Shown in pieces: positions 612 to 14,048 of a stretch of 64,000 nt of DNA (its first letter is position 1; each line of letters opens with the position of its first letter). The stretch covers positions 1-64,000 of the forward strand of contig NW_005434633.1 of the NCBI RefSeq assembly GCF_000315625.1. Direction: 5' to 3'. The notes below the pieces were generated by a model. The model was not told where the DNA came from. It was given only the letters and a program-made list of their open reading frames with translations, and made no database searches. Both the position numbers and the translations under genes were made by a program. This DNA is from Guillardia theta CCMP2712 (Eukaryota; Protista; Cryptophyta).

Positions 612-3600
612 ATGAAGGCTTGCGCGCCCTTCATATCCGCCCTCTGCCTCCTCCTAATCCAAGGAGTAAACTGCGGCTTTTGCCCTGCAACATCCTGTCT
701 GCGCACGGGAGCGTCGGGCCAGTGTCTCCTTCCCAACATCTCCTCCTCTTTCTGCCCAGCAAGCGAGTGGTCACCATACATCACGTCCTACCCTCCTTCA
801 TGGTGGACAAAGTCGAACATCAGTTCCATGAACGCTACCCCTGCGCTGGGGTATATCAAGGAGTACGCGCCATGCTGCCGCCATTGCGTGTGGAGCCTCG
901 GGTATCCCCTTGCAGTCCCCTTGGTCATCGTCATCTCCCCCAACCAAGACCTCTGCGCAGCGGAAGTCTCCAAATTCAGCCTCTGCTACCTCGACTGCAC
1001 AAAGTGGGCAGGTGACCTGTCGGTTCTCGACACAGACGGCAACGGGCGGCTGAGCTACCAGGAGTTTCTCCCCTACTTCACCGACTACCTCGTTGCTCCC
1101 TCCCAGAACTATCAGCTCTACACTGGAGGCAGGATGACGTTCGACGTCCAGTTCTCGCGCTTGAACCCGTTCTATGTGTTTGCCTTCATCGATTTCAACA
1201 ACGACTTCATGGTTTCCATGCAAGAGTGGGACATCTTCCGCCACTTCTGGACTCCTGTCCTGGTCTCTGGAGCAGGCCCCAGCCTCGTCCCCTCCGACGG
1301 CAGGTCGCTTGCTCAAGGGCCGTTCGGAGGGTTCTTCATGGACGAGGCCCTGTATGCGATTTGGAGCACGAATGCCATCAACCTGATGCTGGAGTACTAC
1401 GTCAACCACAGGAAGCAAGGCTTCCGCTCCTACGACGTGAGGGAGCCGGAGAGCGTCGAGAAGATGAGCAGCATGAGCAGCAGGGACCTGGACGGGTCGG
1501 GGAGGGTGTCCATGGAGGAGCATTACTTCTATCATTTCTCGGACAAGAACGGAGACGGGGTGCTGTCACCTGAAGAGTTCTACTCCTCCCTCTACAGGAC
1601 TGACTGCAAACCACTCTGTCCTGTCGTCGGATGCAACTGCTCTGAGTGCCCTGCCAGCGGGGTCGTGGCTGCCGACTGCCCGCCGTCGCCGCAGGGGGAC
1701 GTGGATGGGACGGATCTGAAGAGGAATTTCAATCTGCACGATATGGATAAGAACGGCGTCATCTCTTTCCTCGAGCGTAAGTTCGTCGCTGCCGACCTCA
1801 ACATGGACAGGATGATCGACTCAGAGGAGTGGAGGATCGCGGACTACCCGGAGGACTACGGGCCGTTCCTCGGTCACTGCGTCGTGGAGGGCAGTCGTTG
1901 CGTGATCAACTCGGCGACTTACAACTTCTACATGTCCTTTCACTACTGTGCGTCCCGGGGCTCCAAGACGTACAAGCGTCTTCTCTCGCAGTATCCATGG
2001 TCCTCTTCCTGCCTGCTCAAGGTGGAGGTCGAGCGGCTGCCGCCGTTCGTAGACGTCATCCAGTTCAACACAAGCGATCAGAAGGCGAAGCTGGAGTCGG
2101 AGGGCTGGCTCTGCTGGGATCCTGACCCAGCCGTCTCTAACGACAGCCTGTGCTTCACGGGATATGCCGTGCAGATGTTCCATGCTGCAGCTGAGCGACT
2201 GCTGTGGACGTACAGGTTCGTGCTGTCCCCCAGCTCGCTCACTGTTGCCCAACTCCGTCCTCCGGTGGTGGAGGGCGTCGGGGCAGGGAACGCAGAGTTC
2301 AAGCTTGCGCTGTTCAGCTCCTACAAGATGCCTTGGCGACCTCCCCAGTACAACACGAGCGACTTCTTCTGCTCCTCGACACTCTGGAAGCAGGTGCGCT
2401 AGAGGAGGAGGGAGGGGGCAGGGCTGACTTCGAGTGCAGGACGGTCTGGTGGTGGTGAAGAGGTCGGACGAGAAGGTAGTGTCGATAGAGTTTGCGATCC
2501 TCATGCTCCTCATCTCTCCTTCCTTCATCAACTTCATCGTCTTCTGCTACTTCGTCATGCTCGTCGTCGGGCACATCTTCTGGTGGGTGGAACGACGCCA
2601 GAACCCAGACCTCTTCAACAAGTCGTACGTGTACGGAGTGATGGACGGACTCTGGTTCTCCATCGTCACAGTCACCAGTGTGGGCTACGGCGACAAGGCA
2701 CCCAGGACGGGGCTGGGGAAGAACTTGACCGTGATCTGGATGTTCCTCGGAATGTTGTGCTACGGAGTCTTCAGCAGCGGCGTCTCTGAGCAGATCAACG
2801 TGGCAGCGAAGGAGAACAGCATCAAGAGCGTCTACGACCTCTCAACCTTCCAAGTCGGGGTCCTGGAGAGCATGTCGGAGCCGCTGGTGAAGGGTATCGA
2901 CCTTGGGTTGGACTACAGCTTCACCACAATCAAGTGCAAGGACCTGGCGGAATGTGAGAAATTCCTGCTGACGGATCAGACTATCAGTGCGTTCGTGGCT
3001 GCCCACAGCGATGTCATCGCATACTTCCAGTCCAGGGGCCTCAACGACCAGATGTGCGGGAACCCCATGAGGATCGTAGGAAGCAACTTCTCCTCCATCT
3101 CCTCCTCGCGCTGGACCAGCGACCTCATCAAGGCCTGCAGCTACTCCAACAGCGTCTATGCGGCCCACTACCTCGCCGATGCCCTCTCAGCAACCATGCA
3201 GGAGCTCTTCGACGACGGGACTTCCAGCCTTCTCGCCACCAAGTTCCTCACCCAAGACCAGCCCCTGCTCAACGCGGATGGCTGCAGCTCCGGCACTCGC
3301 TTCCAAGTCAAGCTCATCATCGCCACCATCGTCGCCCTGGTCGTCTACTTCGCGCTCATCGTTGCGGTCGGGATCAGACGCAAGGCGGAGCAGAACAAGA
3401 GGATCAGAGAGTTGCTCGAGCAAGCGATCGCCCGTAGACGAGGAGACCATGACGTGGACGCGAACGCGGCGGCGCTCAAGTATGGGAAGCGATGGGTCAA
3501 CAAAGTGCGAGAGAAGAAGAGGATGGTGAAGGAGGAGAAGCGACAGGAACTGATCAAGCAGTGCATGCACGATCAGATTATCAGCATCATCAAGCAGCTT

Positions 3601-4234
3601 CGAAATGAGGTTCGCCATTCCTCCCTCCCTCCTCCCTCCCCCCTTCCCTCTTGTTCCTCCTCCTCGTCATCGTCGTCATCCTCCTCGTCCCCATGCTGTC
3701 CTGAGGTCAACCAGTGATTCTCTGTCGCAGCTTCACCTGCAGATCGCTCTCACTGACTGCATCTACTGCAACTTCAAGCGCGTCCACACGTTTGTCTCCA
3801 GGTGCCATGCTGCGCCTTCGACCTCCTCCCTCTCTTTCTCTCCTGCTCCTCCTCCTCCTCCCTCCCCTCACTTGTTTCCCTCCTCCTCCTCCCTCCCCTC
3901 TCTTGTTTCCCTGCCCTTCTCCTCTCCGCATCGCTCTCCTCATCTGTCCGCAGGATCACTTCCATCTATCGCATCACCGTTGGAACTCTGGGAGCAATTC
4001 TCTTCGTCCTCACTGTTGTAAGTTTTGCCTCAACATGCTCCATCCCGTCCTCCTTCCCTCTCGCTTTCTTTTTCTCTCAACTCCTCCCTTCTATCCTCGC
4101 TCTCCCCTCCCCTCCCCTCCTTCCCCTCTCCCTCCCCTTCCTTTGTTGTTCTCTCCCTTATCTCTCTATCTCTCATGTTGTTGCAGGCGCTCCTCGTCCT
4201 CTGGAGCAAGACGGTTACCCTCAAGCATGTCTGA
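612..4234 (+). CDS. Ionotropic glutamate receptor-like channel with K+ selectivity filter and N-terminal six-EF-hand ectodomain (5 exons: 612-2393, 2440-3609, 3731-3801, 3954-4017, 4187-4234)
   Basis: Signal peptide MKACAPFISALCLLLIQGVNC. EF-hand loops DTDGNGRLSYQE, DFNNDFMVSMQE, DLDGSGRVSMEE, DKNGDGVLSPEE, DMDKNGVISFLE, DLNMDRMIDSEE. S1-like ERLPPFV...GYAVQMF...YRFV. M1, pore LWFSIVTVTSVGYGDKAPRT, M3, S2 IKSVYDL...VGV, M4. GT-AG phase-0 intron 2394-2439 joins the 596-aa and 427-aa ORFs in frame. Confidence 0.88.
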
Positions 4235-4291
4235 ACTTTGTTTGATTTAATTGAAAATTCAAATTGGCGAGCTAAAACCGCCACACGCTTC

Positions 4292-5735
4292 CTATCTTAC
4301 AGGACCGAAGGAGGGCGACACCATCGGCGATGCTGGCGACAAGCTCGGCGTGTCCATCTGACGAGACAGAACGTTTCCTTGCGAGTCCTCCCAAATCGTC
4401 TGCATACAAATTGAGGAGGAGAGGAGGGAGACAGCAGAAGGAGGGAGGGAGGAAGGAGGAAGACAGCAGGAGGAGTGAGGAAGAAGCAGCATTGGAATCT
4501 GCAGCTTGTCACCTTGACATTGGGCACGAGCTCAAGTGCGATGAACCAGGCGCGAACCTCGTTGAGAGTGTCGGCGCTCACCCGGTAGGTTCGGCTCTTG
4601 GACACTTCAGGGGAAGTCTGGGAGCAAGTCAGGGGAGGAGGAGGAGGAGGAGGAGGAGGAGGAGGAGGAGGAGGGGGAGGGGGGGGAGGTTGAAAATGAA
4701 GGCAAGGGAGCTCGAGGGCAGGAGAACAAGGCGGTGGGAAGAGAAGAGGAGAGGTGGAGAGAGGGGATGGTAAGAGGAAGGGGAGTGCAGTGGAAGAGGT
4801 GATGGGTGGGGAGCAGGTACAACCTTGACGGCGAAGACAGTGCCGGTAACGACCTTCACTTCAGCCCCGTTGAGGTTGATCTTCTCGATCCACCGGCCCA
4901 GGATCGCGTCCTCCTTGCTCTCCGCGTTCTGCAGCATGTAGGCGAAGTCCCCGTGCCCCGTCCCTTCCTTGTCATTGAGGAGCGGCACAATAGCATAGTA
5001 CTTGGGGAACCATTCCTTCTTCTTGGTATCCAGCAGGTGGAGAGTCCCCTCCTGCAACGCCCCCGGTACACGGTCCCCCAGCCGCTTCCTCTCTGCCGAG
5101 CCCGGCAGCCCCCCCGACGCCTCGCGCACCATCCCCGTCCCCTGCTCCTTCCCCTCCAGGTAGGTCGCCAGCGCCAGCGCCCCGTTGCTCCGAGCGATCT
5201 GCAACGCTGTCTCCCTGCGCTGTTGACGGCCCTCGGGTCGCATCCATGCAGGAGGAGAAGCTCGACCAGCCTCGGCCAGTCCTCGTGCATCCCTTCCTCC
5301 GACGAGCACGTCGACAAGAAGTGAAGCACGTCGTCCCCGAAGGCCGTCTTCGCCGTCACCAGCAGGCTCGCCTGCTCCTTCGCAGCGTCCAGCAGCATCT
5401 TGAGGATGGTAGCATACTCTCCCCCTTCCTCTCGCCCAGCCACCGTCACATGCAGCGAGTTCAGCCCCTGCCCGTCAGTGGCAGCGGGAGAAGCGCCTGC
5501 GTCCAGAAGGCACCGGACGATGTCCGAGCGGCCGAGGGAGCAGGAGATCATGAGGACGGTGAAATTGTCCTGATTTCTCTCGTCCAGATCTGCTCCCTCC
5601 GCAATCGCCTTCTTCATCACCTGCTTCCAGTCAGCACGACCCGCAGCGACAGCAATAGAAGAAGAAAAGTAGGACAGGAGGGAGAAGAGAAGCAGCAGCA
5701 GGAGAGGAGGAGGAGGAGGAGAGAAAGAGAAACAG

Positions 5736-5788
<53 letters not shown>

Positions 5789-8700
5789 ACAGCAGCAGCT
5801 CACCTCCACATCCCCAGCCTCCAGCGCATTGTGCAAGCTCGGCCTATTTCCCTTCGGTGGGGAGGCAGGAGGAGCTCCTGTTGGAGCAGCCGCAGCTGCC
5901 GGAGGCGAAGGAGGAAGAGGAGCAGCCGCCGATGGCGGAGATGCAGAAAGAGGAGCGGGAGGGAGGGGAGCCGACTCGACAACTGGATGCTGATGATGCG
6001 GAGGAGGGGATTGCGCCGAAGTCGCCGTGTGCGTGCTTTGCTGCACCTCCTCCTCCTCCCCGTACGTGACTTGACCCTCCAAGATCTGGTCGTAGTGAGT
6101 GATGAACAAGGTCAGCATGCGCTGGGCTGGCTCCAGGTGGGTGTTGGTCAGGAACGGCGTCATCCTATGGGCCAGCCAGGTAGCGTCGTACGCGCCGCCA
6201 CAGTAGCCCTGGATGAGGGAGAGAAGCCAGGCGACCTGAACGAAGAGCTCCAGGTACTCTCCCTCCTCCGTCAACAGGTTCTGCACCGCATCCGACAGGC
6301 TCTTGATCCTACCCTGCAGTGTCACTCCTCCTGCCGCGCCCTCGGACTGCGACAAGAATTCGGGGGAGATGAGCGGGCGAGGCAGACCGCGGAGGAGCCT
6401 GGCGAGGATGTGGACAAGCATGGAGGGCTCCCCCACGAGCGACGCGACGTCCTCCACCTCCCTCCTGCAGCAGAGCTCCAGCACCTCCCTGATCTTGTTT
6501 GCCTTGTGCGCCTCCAGTCTGCCCTCCATGTCCTTCATCACGGTGCTGCGCCACGTCAGCACCTGAGAAGTCAGCTGGACTCCGCCCTCGGCGTCCAGCT
6601 GCAGCTTCTCGTGGACCGCAGCGATGCACGAGCGGATGAGGTCGAACGAGTAGCTCTCCTCGAGTCTCCGCAGCTGCTGCACCATCTCCTCCTCCCTCTC
6701 ATCCAACACAGCACCACTCTGCGCTGCTGATGCACTCTTTCCTACAACGGTGCGAACAGAGGCTGGAGCAGGAGCAGGAGCTGGAACAGGGGTGAATGCA
6801 GAGCCAGACGCGGGGGAGTGAGCAACAGCTGGAGCTGCAGCTGGGGTGATCCCCACAGCAGGATCTTGAGCCCTAGAGCTATGTAGCGACATCATCGGAG
6901 TAGCATTGGAGGACACACGTTGCTCGATCTCCTCTTGCTCCTGCCGGCTCCACTGCGCTCCGACGCCTGCCATGATGGACTTGAACTCGCTTCCCATGGC
7001 CAGCAGGTCGACGGGGGAGCCGTCCTCGACCACCCTGCGCTGCTTCATCACCACGACGCGGTCAAACTGGGAGCAGCGCATAGGAGTTGAGCTGAGGTGA
7101 AGCACGGTAACGTTCCTCTGCCCGTCGAAGAGCGAGTCCAGTCGGTTCAGCTCCTCCATGGACAGCACGCAAGTCGCCTCCTCCAGCACCAGGACCTGTG
7201 GGCGGCGCAGGAGGACCCGAGCCAGGCCCATCAGGAAGCGCTGGCGGGAGTCGGAGGCCGTGAGATCGTTGTTGACGAAGCTGGGAGGCAGCTGCTGGTG
7301 CTCGCGGGGGACGACGCCGACGAACTTGAGGAGGGTGAGCAGGTTGTGCTGCCCGTCCTGGGTGCTCATCATCTCCTCCGTGGGGTCCACGTTGAAGGTC
7401 AGTGAGCCCTTGAACAGCAGCGGCTCCCTTGGCACCAGCCCTACGTGCTTCCGCACGGCCTCGATCGTGACTGAGATGCTGTCCGCTCCTCCGAGGAACA
7501 GAGACCCCTGGATGATGGGCGACGTCTTGAGCAGGCAGCGGGCAAGGGCCTTGAGGTCTTCGGACCTGCGGGAGAGGACGAGGGCGCGGCTGCCGGCCCG
7601 CACGTCCAGCGTCATGCCATCCAGCTCCTTCATGCCGTACTCGTCGATCGTCGTGACGTCCTGGAACAGGATGGAGCCAGCCTCTTGGGTGCTCCAGGAC
7701 TGCGGGAGGACTTGAAGGGCTCGGGAGAGCGGCTTCTCCTCGAGAGGGAAGAACTCGTCTGCCTCCAAGACCCGCCGGATGAAAAGGTGGAAGACAACGG
7801 CCGACTCGAGGAAGCAGAAAGTCATCCAGGGCACGTAGAGGACCAGCTGGACTGCAGACGCCAGCACGAGCCCAGCAAGAGAAAAGCCGTTGATGTCAGT
7901 CAGCGCCCCCATCTGCTTCAAGAGCAGGAGGACGATCAGGGCAGCGGAGAGGAGGAGGCAGCCGAACAAGCCGGAGCACAAGACAGTCCAGGACTGCAGG
8001 CATGCGGCAGCCTTCCTGCTGCTGGTGTACTTGTCAAGAGCGTCCTGCATCGAGAGCAGGGCCGAGCGGTGGCTTCGGCTGAGAGTGATCTGCGTGAGAG
8101 AATCTGCTGTGGAAGAGCACAAGGCCTCCAGATGTGTCCGATACTCCGTGGCTGCCGTGCAGACAGCGCGAAGTCCGTTCATGCCCCTCGTCGTGTTCCA
8201 GATCCATCCGCATGCGCTGATGAGAGGAGCGAAGAAGAAGAGGAAGACGAGCTTCGAGTCTCCCCATGAGGTGGCCTGAGCATGGCCCGTGAAGGAGCAG
8301 ATGGCGTAGGTGAGGAGGACGAGGGAGGAGAGGACGGATAGCATGGAGTGGAAGCTGTGGATCAGGAAGAAGGGGTACTCCTCCACTGATTCTTGAACGT
8401 TCCTGCACGTGAGTTGGAACGTCAGGACTTGCACGACGGCCTTGAGCTCCGTCGGGCCCTTTTGAAACCAACCCAGGAACCTGTTCTGCAAGCGAACGCT
8501 CGCGCTGCTCGCTACCAGGACGAACCAGATCATGTCGCCGGCGAAGAGAAGGATGTACGCAAAGCCGGAGCAAGCAATGAGCACGATAGCGATGTTTTCG
8601 GGCTTTGTGTTGAGAATGTTCAGCCCGCTGAAGTTGATGTCCATGTGCAGGAGGATCCAGTTCTGCAGACCGCACAGCAAGTGGCCAGCGAGGGAGACGA

Positions 8701-11700
8701 GGAAGAAGATGAAAAGAGAGATGTACTCCTGAGACAGCCAGCAGTAGACGGCCCACAGCCACTGAGACCCTGACTCGCTTATCACCAGCGGAGGATGCAG
8801 TACCCCAACGTCAGGAACCAACCAAGACGGAGTGCAAGCCATGTCGGCCAGGTCGACGATGTCAAGCCGCTGCTTCTCCTGCAACTCGTCCGCCCTCATG
8901 CGCAGCTCGGCAAGCGAGGCAAGCGCCTCGACGCTGCTGATGGTGTCCAGTCCCTGCTTGCTGGCCGAGACCAGGAGGAAGGAGTTACAGTGAGCCAGGT
9001 AGGGAGAGGACAGGCTCAGGGACACAACCACTGTCTTGGCCTTCAACTGCCCGAGAATGCAGCTGTGCCACACAAGGTCGCGAGTCTGATCGTCGAGCCT
9101 CTCCAGGATCTCGTCGAAGATGTACACGTCAGCATCCTTGTACACGGCACGCGCCAGCGCGATGCAGCTCGCAAACGTCTCGTCGAGAGCGACCGACGTG
9201 CTCTTGCCTATCACCGTCTCATCCCCCATCGGCAGCATCTGCAGGAAGCGAACGAGACCCGAGCAGGTCACGGCCTTGGTGTACATGTTGTGGTCCAACG
9301 GGAGCCCGAAGAGAACATTCTGCTTGATCGAGCCGGCCAGCAGCTGCGGCTGTCTGCCGCAGAAGATCACTTCCCCATACACGTGCATGTATCCGGTCTG
9401 CCCGTGCCGCGGCATCCACCCGACCATGGCACTGAGCACACTCGACTTGCCGCTCTTGGTGGTACCGGAGACTCCGACGAGGTGTCCTCGGCGAATGTCA
9501 AAGTTGATGGTGTCGGTCATGCAGCCGAGGTAGAAGTTGTGGTCTATGGAGCTCTTGTTGGGCCAGAAGAACATGCTCTGCTTGGCGCTGACTGCGAGGT
9601 CCTCCTGCCCCTTGTTCTTGTGGTCGTCTGCCTTAGGCCTCCCCTCGTGGTTGAGAAACTGAACTATGCGCGAGAGCGAGTTTTGGTAGTTGTGAGACGA
9701 TCGGGAGATGCTCGAGTAGACGTAGAGCGGTACTTGCATGCAGGCTGAGATACACAGGACCATGAAGACCTCGAAGTTTGACACCGACCGTTTCTCAGCG
9801 TACACTATGAAGAGCATCGACGTAGAGGTGACGAAGGCCGCGACGACAGGGAGGAAAGACGAGAAGAGAAACTCGATCGCGCTAGTGACGGAAGAGGAGA
9901 AGATGTCGTTTTCGATGTACGAGGTCAAGTTGGCGATGAACACGTTCTGCAGCTGTAGGACCTTGGCATCCATCCAGTCCTTGAGCACTCCCAGCATCTC
10001 GACAAGCCTGGGGGTCCTCAGCAAGTCCCTCTGCTGCTGCTTCCTGCTGTTGACGAGCAAGATCGAGAGCAAGTGGGCGAGCATGAGCAACGCAAGGGCC
10101 GCCAACCCGCCGATCGCTCCCACCTCTACCTCACGGGCAATCAGCGCTATGGCGATGGCGCAGATAATGATTGAGGCCTGAAGGAGGAAGCGAGCTCTGG
10201 TAGTGGCTGAAACAGTCGAGACGTCGTTGAGAAGCAGCTCAGCCAGGTTGCAGGCGTTAATCTTCTCGTGGTCTGACTGGCTGGCCCCGCAGAACTGCTT
10301 GGAGTGGAGGGCCTTGTTGTAGAGGAAGGACATGAGGCCGCTAGCAGCATCCGTCGACGAGTTGCTGACGCTGCACGAGTAGGAGTGAGCGACGAGGAGC
10401 TGCAGGATGAAGCACACAACACAGCCGACGAGGAGGAGAATCCCCTCCTCAAGGCCCCTCTTAGCCCGCGCCCCCTGGTTGAAGCAGAGCTCTGACGTCG
10501 ATCTGGACGCGAAAGCTTCGCAGTCGATCAACCACAGGTAGAACTCTCGGATGCACATCACGATGCCCACAAGCGTGAGCCCCATCCACAGGACCATCCG
10601 CGCTAAGACGCTCAAACTCCTTATGGTCCCTCCTGTCATGATGTACTTGACGTCCTCCTCCTCCACCTGTGCCCCTTGACTCGTCCTCCTGTTCCACAGG
10701 ATCTCGTGGACCCGCTCGTGAGCGACTGCCGAGCTGCTCCAGAAGTTGTTCCTCGACATGCACTCCTGCAACGACGCGCTGCCTCCCCTCAGCGAGCTGA
10801 GCGCGGCTCCAACCCACGTCCACGTCCACATGTCCATCCCCAACGAGTAGTCCACCTTCATGCTGGGCAGGAAGCTGGTGAATCTCTCAGAGGCCTTGAC
10901 GCTCCTGACCACCACATCGTCCAGCTGATCGACTCCCTCAGTGAAGATCCGACGGGGGGGGATGTCGTCTTGCAGCTGAGCAGAGGGAGAATGCACTGGC
11001 GCTGCCTGCCCCGCCCGCTCCACTTCCTCCACCTGGTCCGCAGGCATAGCTCGAGCAGGAGCAGGAGGAAGCTCTTCACCCTGCTCTGCCTCGAACGCAT
11101 CCACCTTCAAGATCTTCACCACCTTCTTCATTGAGAAAGTCTGCCAGATGCTGCTGTTTGAATCTTCGAGCATGCCGATCAAGATGTCAGCAAGCTCCTC
11201 GCACCCAACGCTGCTTCCTCCCCCCGGCACGAGGTTCACGTGAGTGATGATGCTTCCCCGGTGAACAGAGATCACTTCCACCCGCTCGATGGGGATGAAG
11301 AGAAGCGACGCCAGATCGCTGCGCAGGAGAGTCTTGAAGGCGTTGTACTCGTCCAGAGAGGTGATGACGTCATCATACTCCTCTCCCAGCACCATCTCAA
11401 TGCCCACAGGCTTGTCTTCTTGCCTTTGATCGGCTTCTTTCTCCGGCATCTCATCAGGTTCCCCAGCAACCGGTGCGGAACCTTGCTCCTCCTCTTCCAC
11501 TCGAGAGGTGAACGGTGAGAGGACGGTGAACCTGCTCTGAGGGATCTGGTCGGGCATGTTTTCAGCGCTGGCGTGCTCAAAGGACATGTCCATATTGGAC
11601 TCGTCGAGTGCTGTCTTGCTCAAGACGCTCTCTTCCAGCACGTTCGACTCGGAATCCATCACGTCTGGGTTCAAGTTCTCACCAAGCACGTCCTCCTCCT

Positions 11701-14048
11701 TCGTTCCAGGCTCGTCCCAACCCTCGTCGTTAAACTGTACAGCAAATCTTTCAGCTGCTTCGCCTCCCTCCTCCTTGCGCTCTTGGTGACTATCGATGAT
11801 TCCGCCGAGGTCGTAAGATTCCAGTTCAGGCTCCTCTTTCTTCGCTCCGGCCTCCTCCTCCTTCTCTTTCCTGGGTGAGTTAAAAAGCTCCAACATCTCC
11901 AAGACACTCTTCCCTTCAAGATCGGGAGGGAGTGCTGGCTCATCGTCATCCTGTTGGAGACTGTCGACGACCAAAGGCTGCCTCCCTCCCAAATCATCCT
12001 CTTCCATCTGGTCGAAGACTGGAGACGAAGTCTGCTTCTCCTCTCCGTGCACCACTCTATCCTGTCTCACTCCCTCCTCCTCCACTTCCTCCTCCTCTTT
12101 CTTCATCTCGACCTCGGGCTCCCGTTCATCATGCTCCCGCTCGATGGTCTCTGCAACGGGCTCGACGTCCTGCCTGTCGTGTCCCTTTGCATCAGGAAAG
12201 GCTCCCACATTCTCGCGACTCTCAGCAGCAGCCTCCTCATCATCACCAGCTCCTGTAGAGTTGCTCCTTACCCGCCGGAGGATGACTCCGAAGGGACTCT
12301 TCAGACGTTCCTCCAGCGCTGAGGAGGAAGATCAGGACGGACCAAAGGAGAGCAGAGACAAGGACTGAGGCAGGAAGGACAAACAAGCAGGAGAATCATA
12401 ACAAACACATGGAGACATGATCAGCAGCAAGAAATCACCTTTAGCCTCCTCAGCACTCTCGCTCCTGACAGGCGACAGCTGGTCCTCTGGTGGGCTCCTC
12501 TCCATCTTCGCCTCGTCAACCGCCATCGGAGATCTCTTCTCCATGCTAAAATTCTGCGAGTCGTCGGCCGACGAAGTCCTGTATGTCTCCTGTCTCATCT
12601 TCTCCTCTCTCTGCACGTGGGCTTGCAGAGCTGCCTTAGGAGCTGAGAAGTGCGGCCCTTGCGCTCGCGGCTGGACAGGCTGGGGAACCACCCCCTTCTG
12701 CTCCATCGCTCGGAACATGGCCATCCTGTCAGAGATACTGACCTGCTCCTCCCTCTTGGACTTCAAGACAGGCACAGGCTCAGCCTCCTCCTGCTCGTCC
12801 AAGTGGACCTCTTCAGCTGCTTCCGGCAACGGGCGGAGGCTGTGGAGGACGTTGGAGGAGGTGCCATCGAGAGAGAAGGCAGGGCACTTGCAAGCTTCCG
12901 ATGCCCTGCGGGTGCTCATGGCTCTGTGCAACCTGCTCATGGACTCTGAGACTTGTTGGATCAAGGAGTCAGCGAGGTCAGAGGGGAAGGGGCCGAACCC
13001 TTCCCTCTCGTGCGGCAGGATGTTCATCTGAGCCACGATGCTGAACTTCTTGTCAACACTCGACCTCCCCCGCTGCAGCTTCACGATCTGAATGCGAGTG
13101 AGAGGGACGCGGAGCGCAAACGCCACGTCCTCCTTGATCAGCTTCTCCATCTGCTGCCTCTTCGCAGGGCTCGAGAGCAAGCTGTCATGGTTCTCCTCCA
13201 GGGTCAGCAAGACCCCAACAGTCTCTGACTGGCTGCTGGGCAACAACACCGTTTGCTTCTCCGGCTGACTCGCAGGCTCTTTGACGTCAACCTTGAGGTC
13301 GTCCAGAGAGAGCTCATCGTGGCGATCGTGCTTGTGAGGGTGAAGAGATTCCTCGCTCTTGCTTGCCTGAACTGCATGTCAGCAAAGGAGGAAGACTGAA
13401 GGGGAGGGAAGAAGCGAACAGGGGCCAGGGAGGGACTTACACTCATCACTTTGGTGAACATCTCCGTCAGCTCCTTGACGTGAGACTCTGACTGGAGGTG
13501 CTCGAGCTCGGGGTCAACTTGAGACGAGCTGAGCTTTTGATCGAAGAATGCGGAGTCTTCGGCGTCATCCCCATTCTCCGACGGGTAAGTCCTCGCCGTC
13601 GCAGTGATCTCCATGTCCTCCACGCTCTGCTCTAGAACGCTGCAACAGAATGAGCAAGACAGCACATCATCTTCACAGCCTACCTGGGGTCCGCGGTGGG
13701 CTCCGTAGGTCTGTCGTCTCCTCCCTGTGGCTCGAGGGGCTCCTGGAGCTGTAGCGAGCTGGGAATGACCTCGTTGTGGGTATCAAGGGCAGAGTTCAAG
13801 GGGGAAGCCGAGGAAGGGATGGTGAGCTTGGGAACGGCTGAAGCTCCCCGGGGAGCAGCAAGGTGAGTTGTCACATGATCGTTCTGGCCGATTGGAGATG
13901 GCGAGCGGTGGCGCTCGACGAGTCCCAACGGGTCATGTGTCTTGCTGTGACCGTTCTGAAACGTGGTGACGAAAGGATCGACCGATGCGAAGATCGGAGA
14001 CTGAGAGTTCGCCCTCCTCTGTGAGTCGTCGTGCCTCCTAACTTCCGT
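4292..14048 (-). CDS. Giant multidomain protein: low-complexity N-terminus, 2 SEA-like repeats, degenerate ABCC/MRP-type transporter (TMD1-NBD1-TMD2-NBD2), RhoGAP-like domain, Pro-rich linker, ankyrin repeats, PH domain; 5' end probably further upstream
   Basis: 2450-aa ORF 4856-12208 plus spliced exons (introns 4400-4512, 4618-4823, 5621-5803, about 12319-12438, 14049-14094). ABCC motifs GTTKSGKSS, ALARAVYKDADVYIFDE, LARVLLRRPQVLVLEEAT. RhoGAP-like LARLLRGLPRPLI...LFITHYDQI. Ankyrin GADLDERNQDNFTVLMISC...GRSDIVRCLLDAGA. PH EGTLHLLDTKKKEW...RTYRVSADTLNEVRAWF. One-base frameshift at 5213-5215. Confidence 0.85.

What the first reader, a model, noticed from the sequence alone, without database searches (positions are those of the whole stretch)
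612..4234. K+-filter glutamate-receptor-like channel whose N-terminal domain is six extracytoplasmic EF-hands
Seen: signal peptide, a Cys-rich region with six EF-hand loops, then S1-M1-P-M3-S2-M4 with the pore TVTSVGYGD (2674-2694) and no SYTANLAAF gate motif. Established: iGluRs with a TxVGYG filter are known (prokaryotic GluR0, rotifer AvGluR1), and eukaryotic iGluRs normally carry a LIVBP-like amino-terminal domain, not EF-hands. The signal peptide places the EF-hands on the same outer/luminal side as the ligand clamshell. The S1 Arg may be kept (LFSSYKMPWR vs IAPLTITLVR), but its context is highly diverged. Inference: a K+ channel gated or tuned by external or organellar Ca2+, with or without an amino-acid ligand. 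I do not recognise this architecture as described.
Basis: partly seen in the sequence, partly recalled or inferred. Interest (0 to 1): 0.88.

Follow-up and report, generated by a model that had tools for sequence, protein, structure and literature searches.

The report
EF-hand-capped glutamate-receptor-like potassium channel
A gene of the alga Guillardia theta encodes a glutamate-receptor-type channel with a potassium-channel pore whose outer cap is six calcium-binding EF-hands instead of the usual amino-terminal domain. The design is conserved across cryptophytes, I found no paper on it, and it may be a channel controlled by calcium outside the cytoplasm.

Summary
The window is Guillardia theta; the gene is GUITHDRAFT_163588, annotated only as a hypothetical or EF-hand protein.

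**Confirmed features**
- Exon 1 (612-2393) encodes a signal peptide, a Cys-rich stretch, six canonical EF-hand loops and S1.
- After a 46-nt GT..AG intron, exon 2 (2440-3609) encodes M1, a TSVGYGD pore, M3, S2, M4 and a basic tail.
- Transcript-derived cryptophyte orthologues run collinear across the junction, so this is one gene.

**Homology and fold**
- An AlphaFold model of an orthologue's core (pLDDT 88.7) matches iGluR LBD-TMD structures (Z 17-19).
- Profile comparison with bacterial GluR0-like channels gives E 7e-58.

**Family**
- All six EF loops, the signal peptide and 14 ectodomain cysteines are conserved.
- Members come from Guillardia (3-4 loci), Hanusia, Rhodomonas and Goniomonas.
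- Among the 130 next-best relatives, only a Goniomonas fragment carries EF-hands.

- The ligand-binding Arg and Asp/Glu are both replaced across the family, so canonical amino-acid binding is unlikely.
- The NCBI model is wrong after 3075.
- A conserved fifth C-terminal TM probably lies in three small 3' exons ending at 4234 (tentative).

Calcium gating and K+ selectivity remain inference. No RNA reads could be obtained. I rate it a new variant of a known kind.

The parts
612..674 (+). Start codon and signal peptide (aa 1-21)
   Evidence: First ATG after an upstream stop. Hydrophobic N-terminus, KD 1.8. SP-like N-termini in about 15 complete family members.
675..1028 (+). Cys-rich N-terminal stretch including the conserved CCRHCVW motif (aa 22-139)
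   Evidence: Conserved Cys at aa 38, 48, 88, 89, 92 and 129. Segment 92-110 is not hydrophobic in orthologues, so it is not a TM. AF2 pLDDT 27-73.
1029..1226 (+). EF-hand pair 1 (loops at 1029-1064 and 1191-1226)
   Evidence: Loops DTDGNGRLSYQE and DFNNDFMVSMQE. Canonical in 18 of 21 and 23 of 23 family members.
1485..1577 (+). EF-hand pair 2 (loops at 1485-1520 and 1542-1577)
   Evidence: Loops DLDGSGRVSMEE and DKNGDGVLSPEE. Canonical in 24 of 24 members for both.
1740..1829 (+). EF-hand pair 3 (loops at 1740-1775 and 1794-1829)
   Evidence: Loops DMDKNGVISFLE and DLNMDRMIDSEE. Canonical in 23 of 24 and 20 of 23 members.
1974..2393 (+). S1 half of the clamshell (approx. aa 455-594), end of exon 1
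   Evidence: hhalign of the family against GluR0-like channels covers S1. In the AF2 model of orthologue P0003, S1 and S2 form a bilobed domain matching iGluR LBDs; 4kcc gives Z 17.5, rmsd 4.5 over 247 aa.
2394..2439 (+). Intron 1 (46 nt, GT..AG, phase 0)
   Evidence: Sequence read directly. tblastn of four orthologues breaks exactly at 2393/2437 with no residues lost. The NCBI model P0001 uses the same junction. In Hanusia phi, P0002 reads through this point and P0010 starts at it.
2491..2577 (+). M1 transmembrane helix
   Evidence: KD 2.33. AF2 helix 170-194 in the orthologue model.
2635..2694 (+). Pore helix and selectivity filter TVTSVGYGD (filter 2668-2694)
   Evidence: Pfam Ion_trans_2 E 1.8e-12. 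The family profile's best PDB sequence hits are K+ channel pores such as Lmo2059, KvAP and KcsA. Coordinates.
2719..2787 (+). M3 inner helix, lacking SYTANLAAF
   Evidence: KD 1.63. Motif absent. AF2 helix 233-268.
2788..3303 (+). S2 half of the clamshell
   Evidence: hhalign and fold matches. Conserved Cys at aa 760, 766 and 800, plus two more further along S2. The S2 Asp column is replaced by Ala here and Pro elsewhere. The NCBI model wrongly splices out 3076-3140.
3307..3375 (+). M4 transmembrane helix
   Evidence: KD 3.07. AF2 helix 428-469. The 15 residues after it hold 6 K/R.
3376..3609 (+). Basic, helical cytosolic segment; end of exon 2
   Evidence: Orthologues align up to 3606. AG|GT at 3609/3610.
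3731..3789 (+). Candidate exon 3 (tentative)
   Evidence: GCAG| acceptor, compatible phase, and weak likeness to orthologue tails. The profile search was not significant.
3954..4017 (+). Candidate exon 4: start of the conserved C-terminal TM (tentative)
   Evidence...RITVGTLGAILFVLTV resembles ...SIVGTLLVVTLFSV of orthologues. Donor GTAAGT at 4018. The profile hit is only E about 28.
4187..4234 (+). Candidate exon 5: end of the C-terminal TM (ALLVLWSK...) and stop codon (tentative)
   Evidence: Family-conserved VW motif. Weak profile hit, E about 3. The total CDS is 3123 nt, or 1040 aa, in frame and similar to the 1014-1062 aa orthologues.

Best explanation
One five-exon gene (GUITHDRAFT_163588 of Guillardia theta) encodes a roughly 1040-aa subunit of a tetrameric iGluR/GluR0-superfamily channel.

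Order of parts: signal peptide, Cys-rich stretch, three EF-hand pairs, S1, M1, K+-type pore loop (TSVGYGD), M3, S2, M4, a basic cytosolic segment, and probably a fifth C-terminal TM.

The EF-hand module sits where animal and plant receptors carry the LIVBP-like amino-terminal domain. It lies on the extracytoplasmic (outside or lumenal) face, on top of the S1/S2 clamshell.

The clamshell keeps its fold but has lost the Arg and Asp/Glu that hold an alpha-amino acid. The most likely working principle is therefore that Ca2+ occupancy of the EF-hands, rather than an amino acid, sets the clamshell and linker conformation and so the open probability of a K+-preferring pore. That would make it a channel reporting extracellular or store Ca2+.

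Shown: architecture, homology, fold, conservation, and topology indicators.

Inferred: Ca2+ binding, coupling to the gate, K+ selectivity, and the membrane of residence.
For: - Identity and single gene: 100% match to P0001, and collinear transcript-derived orthologues of 955-1021 aa carrying both EF-hand and Ion_trans_2/Lig_chan domains.
- EF-hands: Pfam. Six loops, canonical in 18-24 of 21-24 relatives each.
- Channel: Pfam. K+-pore profile hits.
- Homology: hhalign to GluR0-like channels gives probability 100, E 7e-58 over 371 columns.
- Fold: AF2 core pLDDT 88.7. Foldseek to NMDA/AMPA LBD-TMD gives E 1e-13. VIA gives Z 17-19.
- Topology: signal peptide conserved; 14 conserved cysteines between the signal peptide and M4; segment 92-110 not hydrophobic in orthologues; 6 K/R in the 15 residues after M4.
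- Loss of amino-acid contacts: Arg column becomes P/L/T/V, Asp column becomes Pro in 21 of 23.
- EF-hand fusion confined to this family: 1 of 130 next-best relatives has EF-hands, and it is a Goniomonas family fragment; 90 of the 130 have SBP_bac_3.
Against: - No functional data of any kind.
- No G. theta RNA reads could be obtained, so the splice junctions rest on orthologue collinearity and consensus sites.
- G. theta is marine (my own knowledge). At the cell surface, roughly 10 mM Ca2+ would saturate ordinary EF-hands, which favours a structural role unless affinity is low or the protein sits in an internal store.
- A TxVGYG motif does not guarantee K+ selectivity: AvGluR1 is reported as Na+-permeable in PMC3483616, though called K+-selective in PMC11479355.
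- G. theta has Ser for the first Thr of TVGYG.
- The EF-domain model is only of moderate confidence (pLDDT 74.9) and matches nothing beyond generic EF-hand proteins.
- The clamshell pocket might bind some other, unknown ligand.
Confidence: 0.55

Rival explanations
1. The architecture and topology are the same, but the EF-hands are a constitutively Ca2+-loaded structural or assembly domain, doing the ATD's job of dimerisation and tetramer assembly. Gating comes from something else: an unidentified non-amino-acid ligand in the remodelled clamshell, a partner protein, or membrane voltage or tension.
For: - Seawater Ca2+ would saturate canonical loops (my own knowledge).
- Extracellular EF-hands such as SPARC's are largely structural (my own knowledge). 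One family member even gives a weak SPARC_Ca_bdg Pfam hit, E 1.8e-4.
- The clamshell fold and many of its residues are conserved, which could reflect a retained pocket.
Against: - All six loops keep the full set of liganding positions across deep cryptist divergence, including Goniomonas. That is more than stability alone usually needs.
- The family includes taxa that my own knowledge places in differing salinities.
- The canonical ligand contacts are gone.
Confidence: 0.25
2. The pore is not K+-selective. The protein is a non-selective cation channel, possibly Ca2+-permeable like plant GLRs, with EF-hand modulation.
For: - AvGluR1 carries TXVGYG yet is reported permeable to Na+ (PMC3483616).
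- G. theta has Ser in place of the first Thr of TVGYG.
Against: - The pore helix and filter are very close to bona fide K+ channels. The family profile's top PDB hits are K+ channel pores, E 3e-18 to 1e-11.
- T/S-V-G-Y-G-D is near invariant in the family and in the GluR0-like relatives. GluR0 is K+-selective according to PMC11479355.
Confidence: 0.15
3. Inverted topology: the hydrophobic stretch at aa 92-110 is a real TM. The EF-hands and the clamshell would then be cytosolic, the pore would sit in the orientation of classical K+ channels, and the protein would be an ordinary cytosolic-Ca2+-activated K+ channel.
For: - KD 1.71 for aa 92-110 in G. theta.
- Cytosolic EF-hand control of channels is the common case (my own knowledge).
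Against: - The same segment scores only 0.16-1.36 in orthologues and contains conserved Pro, Gly and charged residues.
- 14 conserved cysteines lie in the supposed cytosolic part.
- The stretch after M4 is strongly basic, 6 K/R in 15 aa, which by the positive-inside rule puts S2 outside.
Confidence: 0.04
4. Gene-model artefact: two adjacent genes, a secreted EF-hand protein and a separate channel, or a pseudogene.
For: - The two ORFs are in different frames, with a stop at 2400.
- In Hanusia phi, the database holds two separate products, P0002 and P0010.
Against: - S1 lies in ORF 1 and S2 in ORF 2, and both are needed for one clamshell.
- Complete MMETSP transcripts from other cryptophytes encode the fusion without interruption.
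- The Hanusia products end and begin exactly at the junction, with a low-complexity read-through tail. That pattern suggests an unspliced or unrecognised intron.
- Both exons have intact long ORFs.
Confidence: 0.02

Closest known systems
GluR0-type prokaryotic glutamate receptor K+ channels (SBP_bac_3 + Ion_trans_2; Synechocystis GluR0 and its many bacterial relatives)
   Same: - They are the nearest non-family sequence relatives, phmmer E 1e-27 to 1e-18. Named examples are from Planctomycetota MAGs, Mesostigma and Tetraselmis.
- hhalign E 7e-58 over S1, pore and S2.
- Same TVGYGD filter and surrounding motifs: W..ER..N..F, GxxDGxWW/F, GYGDKxP.
   Different: - GluR0 has no N-terminal domain beyond the signal peptide and no M4 (PMC11479355).
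- It keeps the Arg and Asp that bind amino acids, in 86% of the relatives sampled each.
- The cryptist protein adds roughly 430 aa of EF-hand module, M4, a long basic tail and probably a fifth TM, and has lost both ligand contacts.
Eukaryotic iGluRs / plant GLRs (AMPA, NMDA, AtGLR3.4) and rotifer AvGluR1
   Same: - Overall layer plan: N-terminal domain, then the S1/S2 clamshell, then M1-P-M3 plus M4.
- They are the best structural matches (Foldseek E 1e-13, VIA Z 17-19).
- AvGluR1 also combines the eukaryotic layout with a TXVGYG filter.
   Different: - The ATD is a LIVBP-type fold in these receptors and six EF-hands here.
- SYTANLAAF is absent here.
- Ligand-contact residues are absent here.
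- This protein has an extra C-terminal TM.
- Sequence similarity to their LBDs is too low for the family profile to find them among the top PDB sequence hits.
Lumenal or extracellular EF-hand proteins: the CREC family (reticulocalbin, calumenin, Cab45: signal peptide plus six EF-hands), STIM1's lumenal EF-SAM sensor, and SPARC's EC domain (all from my own knowledge)
   Same: - A signal peptide followed by multiple canonical EF-hands in an oxidising, high-Ca2+ compartment.
- STIM shows that a lumenal EF-hand can control a channel.
   Different: - No specific sequence or fold relation was found; there were only generic EF-hand matches.
- Here the EF-hands are covalently part of the channel subunit.
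Channels with built-in cytosolic EF-hands or Ca2+ sensors (TPC1, BK/Slo RCK, polycystin-2; from my own knowledge and PMC11085791 for TPC)
   Same: A Ca2+ sensor and a pore in one polypeptide.
   Different: Those sensors face the cytosol and belong to other channel superfamilies. Here the sensor is predicted to be extracytoplasmic and acts through an iGluR clamshell.

Membership tests
iGluR/GluR0 superfamily (Pfam Lig_chan PF00060) | Pfam Lig_chan score above the gathering threshold | tested here: met
   Exon 2 product scores 38.0 bits against a cut-off of 30.8, E 1.8e-9. 21 of 26 family members match.
iGluR/GluR0 superfamily (Pfam Lig_chan PF00060) | A bilobed S1/S2 clamshell (PBP type II) split by the channel insert | tested here: met
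   AF2 model of orthologue P0003:433-915 has pLDDT 88.7. Isolated GluN1 LBD 4kcc gives Z 17.5, rmsd 4.5 over 247 aa; full LBD-TMD chains give Z 17-19. hhalign to GluR0-like channels gives E 7e-58. The test was done on the orthologue, not on the joined G. theta protein.
iGluR/GluR0 superfamily (Pfam Lig_chan PF00060) | An alpha-carboxylate-binding Arg in S1 and an alpha-amino-binding Asp/Glu in S2 | tested here: not met
   The Arg column (86% R in 44 GluR0-like sequences) holds P/L/T/V in the family. The Asp column (86% D) holds Pro in 21 of 23 and Ala in 2 of 23, including G. theta. hhalign gives the same picture.
Eukaryotic iGluR/GLR | An M4 helix after S2 | tested here: met
   KD 3.07 segment at 3307-3375. 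AF2 helix 428-469. The alignment to GluA1/A2 extends to model residue 461 (row 19).
Eukaryotic iGluR/GLR | A LIVBP-like amino-terminal domain | tested here: not met
   Pfam finds only EF-hand families in aa 1-594. The fold search of the N-terminal model returns only EF-hand proteins, weakly.
Eukaryotic iGluR/GLR | The SYTANLAAF gate motif in M3 | tested here: not met
   The motif is absent. M3 reads ...WMFLGMLCYGVFSSGVSEQI.
K+ channels (Pfam Ion_trans_2 PF07885) | Pfam score above threshold and a T-x-V-G-Y-G-D signature after a pore helix | tested here: met
   47.4 bits against a cut-off of 22.5. TSVGYGD lies at 2674-2694. G. theta has Ser where most relatives have the first Thr of TVGYG. The family profile's best PDB hits are K+ channel pores.
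K+ channels (Pfam Ion_trans_2 PF07885) | Measured K+ selectivity | not testable with these tools
   This needs electrophysiology. AvGluR1 shows that the motif alone is not proof (PMC3483616).
EF-hand Ca2+-binding proteins | Paired helix-loop-helix units with 12-residue loops carrying liganding residues at positions 1, 3, 5 and 12 | tested here: met
   Six loops form three pairs. Pfam EF-hand_1 scores 52.6 bits against 25.4, and EF-hand_7 scores 47.4 against 30. The loops are conserved across the family. Flanking helices appear in the AF2 model.
EF-hand Ca2+-binding proteins | Demonstrated Ca2+ binding and its affinity | not testable with these tools
   This needs ITC, 45Ca or equivalent on the expressed ectodomain.

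The most novel reading that the evidence does not exclude
A previously undescribed class of ion channel in which an iGluR clamshell no longer binds a small-molecule ligand. Instead it serves as a mechanical transducer between a six-EF-hand extracytoplasmic Ca2+ sensor and a K+ pore. This would be a direct extracellular- or store-Ca2+-gated K+ channel, for example a lumenal-Ca2+-controlled counter-ion channel of the ER or another Ca2+ store. It would be ancestral to Cryptista, including plastid-lacking Goniomonas.
Probability: 0.35. Interest if true: 0.85.

Novelty: new variant of a known kind. Interest (0 to 1): 0.7.

Why it matters
iGluRs are the textbook case of modular channel evolution: a binding protein joined to an inverted K+ channel, with an added N-terminal domain. 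This family shows a different solution at the top layer. A Ca2+-binding EF-hand module replaces the LIVBP-type domain, while the amino-acid pocket has been dismantled and the ancestral K+ filter kept.

If Ca2+ on the outer or lumenal side gates it, it would be a new way for a eukaryotic cell to couple external or store Ca2+ directly to K+ conductance. It would also be a natural experiment on how iGluR upper layers drive the gate, and a potential genetically encoded Ca2+-to-K+ actuator.

In addition, it corrects the public gene model of GUITHDRAFT_163588.

Tried and rejected
- **RNA evidence.** No transcript evidence from G. theta itself was obtained.
- **EF-module/core docking.** There is no verdict, and this is no evidence either way.
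- **Hanusia DNA.** The look-up of encoding contigs for Hanusia P0010 found nothing on record, so the 3' exons could not be checked against Hanusia DNA.
- **3' exons by profile.** A profile of family C-terminal tails searched against the frames of 3500-4400 gave only non-significant hits (E 3-28). The three 3' exons therefore stay tentative.
- **EF-domain relatives.** The protein atlas search returned only generic EF-hand clusters below the trust level. Foldseek of the EF model found nothing with E <= 0.001.
- **Mixed profile.** The mixed profile A3 against PDB was dominated by its GluR0-like rows, so I did not use it as evidence for the family. The family-only profile A5 was used instead.
- **Rejected readings.**
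  - A TM at aa 92-110.
  - Plastid targeting: no transit-peptide-like stretch or Phe after the signal peptide in orthologues (my reading, which rests on known cryptophyte targeting rules).
  - The NCBI 3' model: its 65-nt 'intron' at 3076-3140 removes conserved S2 sequence that all orthologues retain.
- **Joined model.** The joined spliced protein of G. theta was never sent to any search or fold. Exons were searched by reference, and the junction-spanning fold used the natural orthologue P0003. In one search a script joined the three small candidate 3' exons in memory only, to check frame and length.


Full report
**What the window is.** The product of 612-2393 is 100% identical to the first 594 aa of GUITHDRAFT_163588 of Guillardia theta CCMP2712. 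NCBI annotates it as 'hypothetical protein' and UniRef as 'EF-hand domain-containing protein'. The window is contig C41 of the 87-Mb assembly.

**Checking the observation.**
- ORF 612-2402 (596 aa) and ORF 2434-3717 (427 aa) lie in different frames.
- GT at 2394 and AG at 2439 bound a 46-nt intron that joins ...TLWKQ to DGLVVVKR... in frame.
- Exon 1 begins with a hydrophobic signal-peptide-like segment and has 26 Cys.
- It has six EF-hand loops at aa 140, 194, 292, 311, 377 and 395. Three satisfy the strict PROSITE pattern, and all six have Asp1, Asp/Asn/Ser3 and Glu12.
- Pfam gives EF-hand_1 at E 1.8e-14 for exon 1. For exon 2 it gives Ion_trans_2 at E 1.8e-12 and Lig_chan at E 1.8e-9. All are above the curated cut-offs.
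- The filter TVTSVGYGD lies at 2668-2694, and SYTANLAAF is absent.
- Hydrophobic M1, M3 and M4 are in the expected places.

**One gene or two.** The evidence is therefore comparative.
- Transcript-derived proteins from other cryptophytes carry both the EF-hand and the channel domains in one ORF. These are MMETSP transcripts, including Rhodomonas abbreviata, of 929-1021 aa.
- Their tblastn alignments to the window break exactly at 2393/2437 without losing a residue.
- The NCBI model uses the same junction.
- In Hanusia phi, the database holds two products. P0002 ends in a low-complexity read-through right after ...LWKQ, and P0010 starts MVVQ-DGLVVV.... That is the pattern expected from an unrecognised intron at the same position.
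- S1 is in exon 1 and S2 in exon 2, and together they form one domain (see below).
- I put separate genes at about 2%.

**Gene model corrections.**
- The NCBI model (904 aa) leaves the conserved frame after GNPMRI (nt 3075) and resumes at 3141 in another frame.
- All orthologues align straight through to 3606. That 65-nt 'intron' is therefore coding, and the public model lacks the end of S2 and M4.
- Family members end with a conserved extra TM carrying a VW motif. The continuous ORF 2 instead ends in a Ser/Pro-rich tail.
- Three small exons would supply ...RITVGTLGAILFVLTV-ALLVLWSK...stop, giving a 3123-nt CDS (1040 aa). They are 3731-3789, 3954-4017 and 4187-4234.
- All three have GCAG| acceptors, and the last intron has a GTAAGT donor.
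- A tail profile does not reach significance on such short pieces, so this 3' model is tentative.
- The joined protein was not searched or folded. Exons were used by reference, and the natural orthologue P0003 was used where a junction-spanning sequence was needed.

**Homology and fold of the channel half.**
- An exhaustive phmmer search of exon 2 found 19 representatives at E < 1e-30, all of this family. Below them is a large tier of proteins of roughly 350-400 aa at E 1e-27 to 1e-18.
- That tier consists of SBP_bac_3/Lig_chan-Glu_bd plus Ion_trans_2 proteins, meaning GluR0-type channels.
- The ten I looked up by name include Planctomycetota (Phycisphaerales) MAGs, an unclassified bacterium and the green algae Mesostigma and Tetraselmis.
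- Profile-profile comparison of the family core (A5) with GluR0-like sequences (A6) gives probability 100 and E 7e-58 over 371 columns covering S1, pore and S2.
- The AlphaFold2 model of P0003:433-915 is confident, with pLDDT 88.7 and pTM 0.79.
- It aligns over nearly its whole length to NMDA and AMPA receptor LBD-TMD chains, at Foldseek E 1e-13 and VIA Z 17-19.
- Isolated LBD crystal structures match S1 and S2 with the TMD skipped. For example, 4kcc gives Z 17.5, rmsd 4.5 A over 247 aa.
- By sequence against the PDB, the family-only profile finds K+ channel pores first (Lmo2059, KvAP, KcsA, KCNQ, BK). So the pore is K+-channel-like in sequence, and the clamshell is recognisable by fold and by profile only.

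**The ligand pocket.**
- In 44 GluR0-like sequences, the S1 Arg is 86% conserved and the S2 Asp 86%.
- In the 23 family rows, the Arg column holds P/L/T/V. The Asp column holds Pro in 21 rows and Ala in 2, one of which is G. theta.
- hhalign places an aromatic residue opposite the Arg.
- The DFS motif becomes x-C-S with an invariant Cys.
- Canonical alpha-amino-acid binding is therefore unlikely. The clamshell may be ligand-free or bind something else.

**The EF-hand half.**
- Each of the six loops is canonical in 18-24 of the 21-24 relatives that cover it, including Goniomonas avonlea for loops 2-6. Loop 3 (DLDGSxR[IV]S[LM]EE) is almost invariant.
- The AF2 model of aa 22-452 has pLDDT 74.9 and pTM 0.80, with disordered N-terminal and Cys-rich linker stretches.
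- It resembles only generic EF-hand proteins (obelin, NCS-1, calmodulin) at E > 0.03. The atlas search adds nothing.
- It is not a LIVBP fold.

**Topology.**
- About 15 complete family members have a signal-peptide-like N-terminus.
- The only other hydrophobic stretch before M1 (aa 92-110, KD 1.71 in G. theta) scores 0.16-1.36 in orthologues and is a conserved CCRHCVWSLGYP... motif, not a TM.
- Fourteen cysteine positions are conserved between the signal peptide and M4, as expected for a disulfide-bonded ectodomain.
- The 15 residues after M4 hold six Lys/Arg, against one before it.
- With the iGluR arrangement of S1 and S2 on one side, the EF-hands fall on the extracytoplasmic face.
- No transit-peptide-like feature follows the signal peptide, so the secretory pathway is the likely route. 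The plasma membrane, ER/CER or another compartment are all possible, and the actual membrane is unknown.

**Distribution.**
- G. theta has at least three clear loci (C11, C41 and C49) and a fourth, intron-rich or broken one on C6. Two of these correspond to GUITHDRAFT_100940 and _134434.
- Named relatives come from Hanusia phi, Rhodomonas and Goniomonas avonlea. The rest are unnamed metagenome or metatranscriptome contigs.
- Among the 130 next-best representatives, only one carries EF-hands, and it is a Goniomonas family fragment.
- As far as these searches see, the fusion is confined to Cryptista. Because it includes Goniomonas, it is old within that group.

**Mechanism.**
- Best reading (0.55): a tetrameric channel with a K+-type pore. 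The EF-hand layer occupies the ATD position, and its Ca2+ occupancy biases the clamshell and linker conformation and thereby gating. It would sense Ca2+ outside the cytoplasm.
- Shown: parts, homology, fold, conservation, and the side of the membrane (by indirect indicators).
- Inferred: Ca2+ binding, coupling, selectivity and location.
- Main rival (0.25): the EF-hands are a permanently Ca2+-loaded structural or assembly domain, and another stimulus gates the pore. Marine Ca2+ of about 10 mM (my own knowledge) makes this a serious alternative if the protein is at the cell surface.
- Non-selective permeation is possible (0.15), given AvGluR1 (PMC3483616; but see PMC11479355) and the Thr-to-Ser change in G. 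theta.
- Inverted topology (0.04) and a two-gene artefact (0.02) are unlikely.

**Comparison with the known, and novelty.**
- It belongs to the iGluR/GluR0 superfamily by homology and fold. It fails three features that define eukaryotic iGluRs/GLRs: the LIVBP ATD, the SYTANLAAF motif and the amino-acid contact residues. It exceeds GluR0 by M4, the tail, the fifth TM and the EF module.
- Five literature searches found no description of an EF-hand/iGluR fusion or of this gene. They covered EF-hand plus glutamate receptor plus cryptophyte or algae, GluR0 with protists, Guillardia, and the locus tag.
- The library does not cover subscription journals, so this is absence in what I could search.
- The domain combination is visible in precomputed Pfam annotations, so it is not hidden, only undescribed.
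- I rate it a new variant of a known kind, with interest 0.7.

Noticed in passing
window 3076-3140: The public model GUITHDRAFT_163588 (904 aa) splices out 65 nt here (GT..AG) and shifts frame. It loses the end of S2, M4 and the tail. All orthologues align straight through, so the model is wrong from 3075 onwards.
   Followed up: yes
window 3610-4234: Family members end in a conserved extra TM (...VW G/A...) after a basic cytosolic stretch of about 100 aa. That makes a five-TM iGluR-like subunit, which is unusual in itself. In G. theta this TM seems to be split over small exons, with all acceptors reading GCAG.
   Followed up: partly
G000:C6:328994-330571 (-): A fourth family locus in the G. 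theta genome matches in five short pieces with TGA/TAA stops inside two of them. It is either intron-rich or a pseudogene.
   Followed up: no
Proteins P0035, P0052, P0072, P0086, P0097, P0124 (search hits, not in the window): Among the GluR0-like relatives, five of the 130 sampled carry an OpuAC (glycine-betaine binding) domain and eight a phosphonate-binding domain instead of SBP_bac_3, each fused to the same K+ pore. GluR0-like K+-pore proteins also occur in the green algae Mesostigma viride and Tetraselmis astigmatica.
   Followed up: no
window 4856-12208 (-): A 2450-aa uninterrupted ORF lies on the opposite strand, convergent with this gene. It looks ABC-transporter-like and has long poly-Cys and poly-Glu codon runs. 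Another finding of this scan already notes it.
   Followed up: no
window 3620-4180: The 3' region of the gene is strongly CT-rich on the + strand (GC skew down to -0.54). This gives many spurious Ser/Pro/Leu-rich ORFs in all frames, which should not be read as genes.
   Followed up: partly
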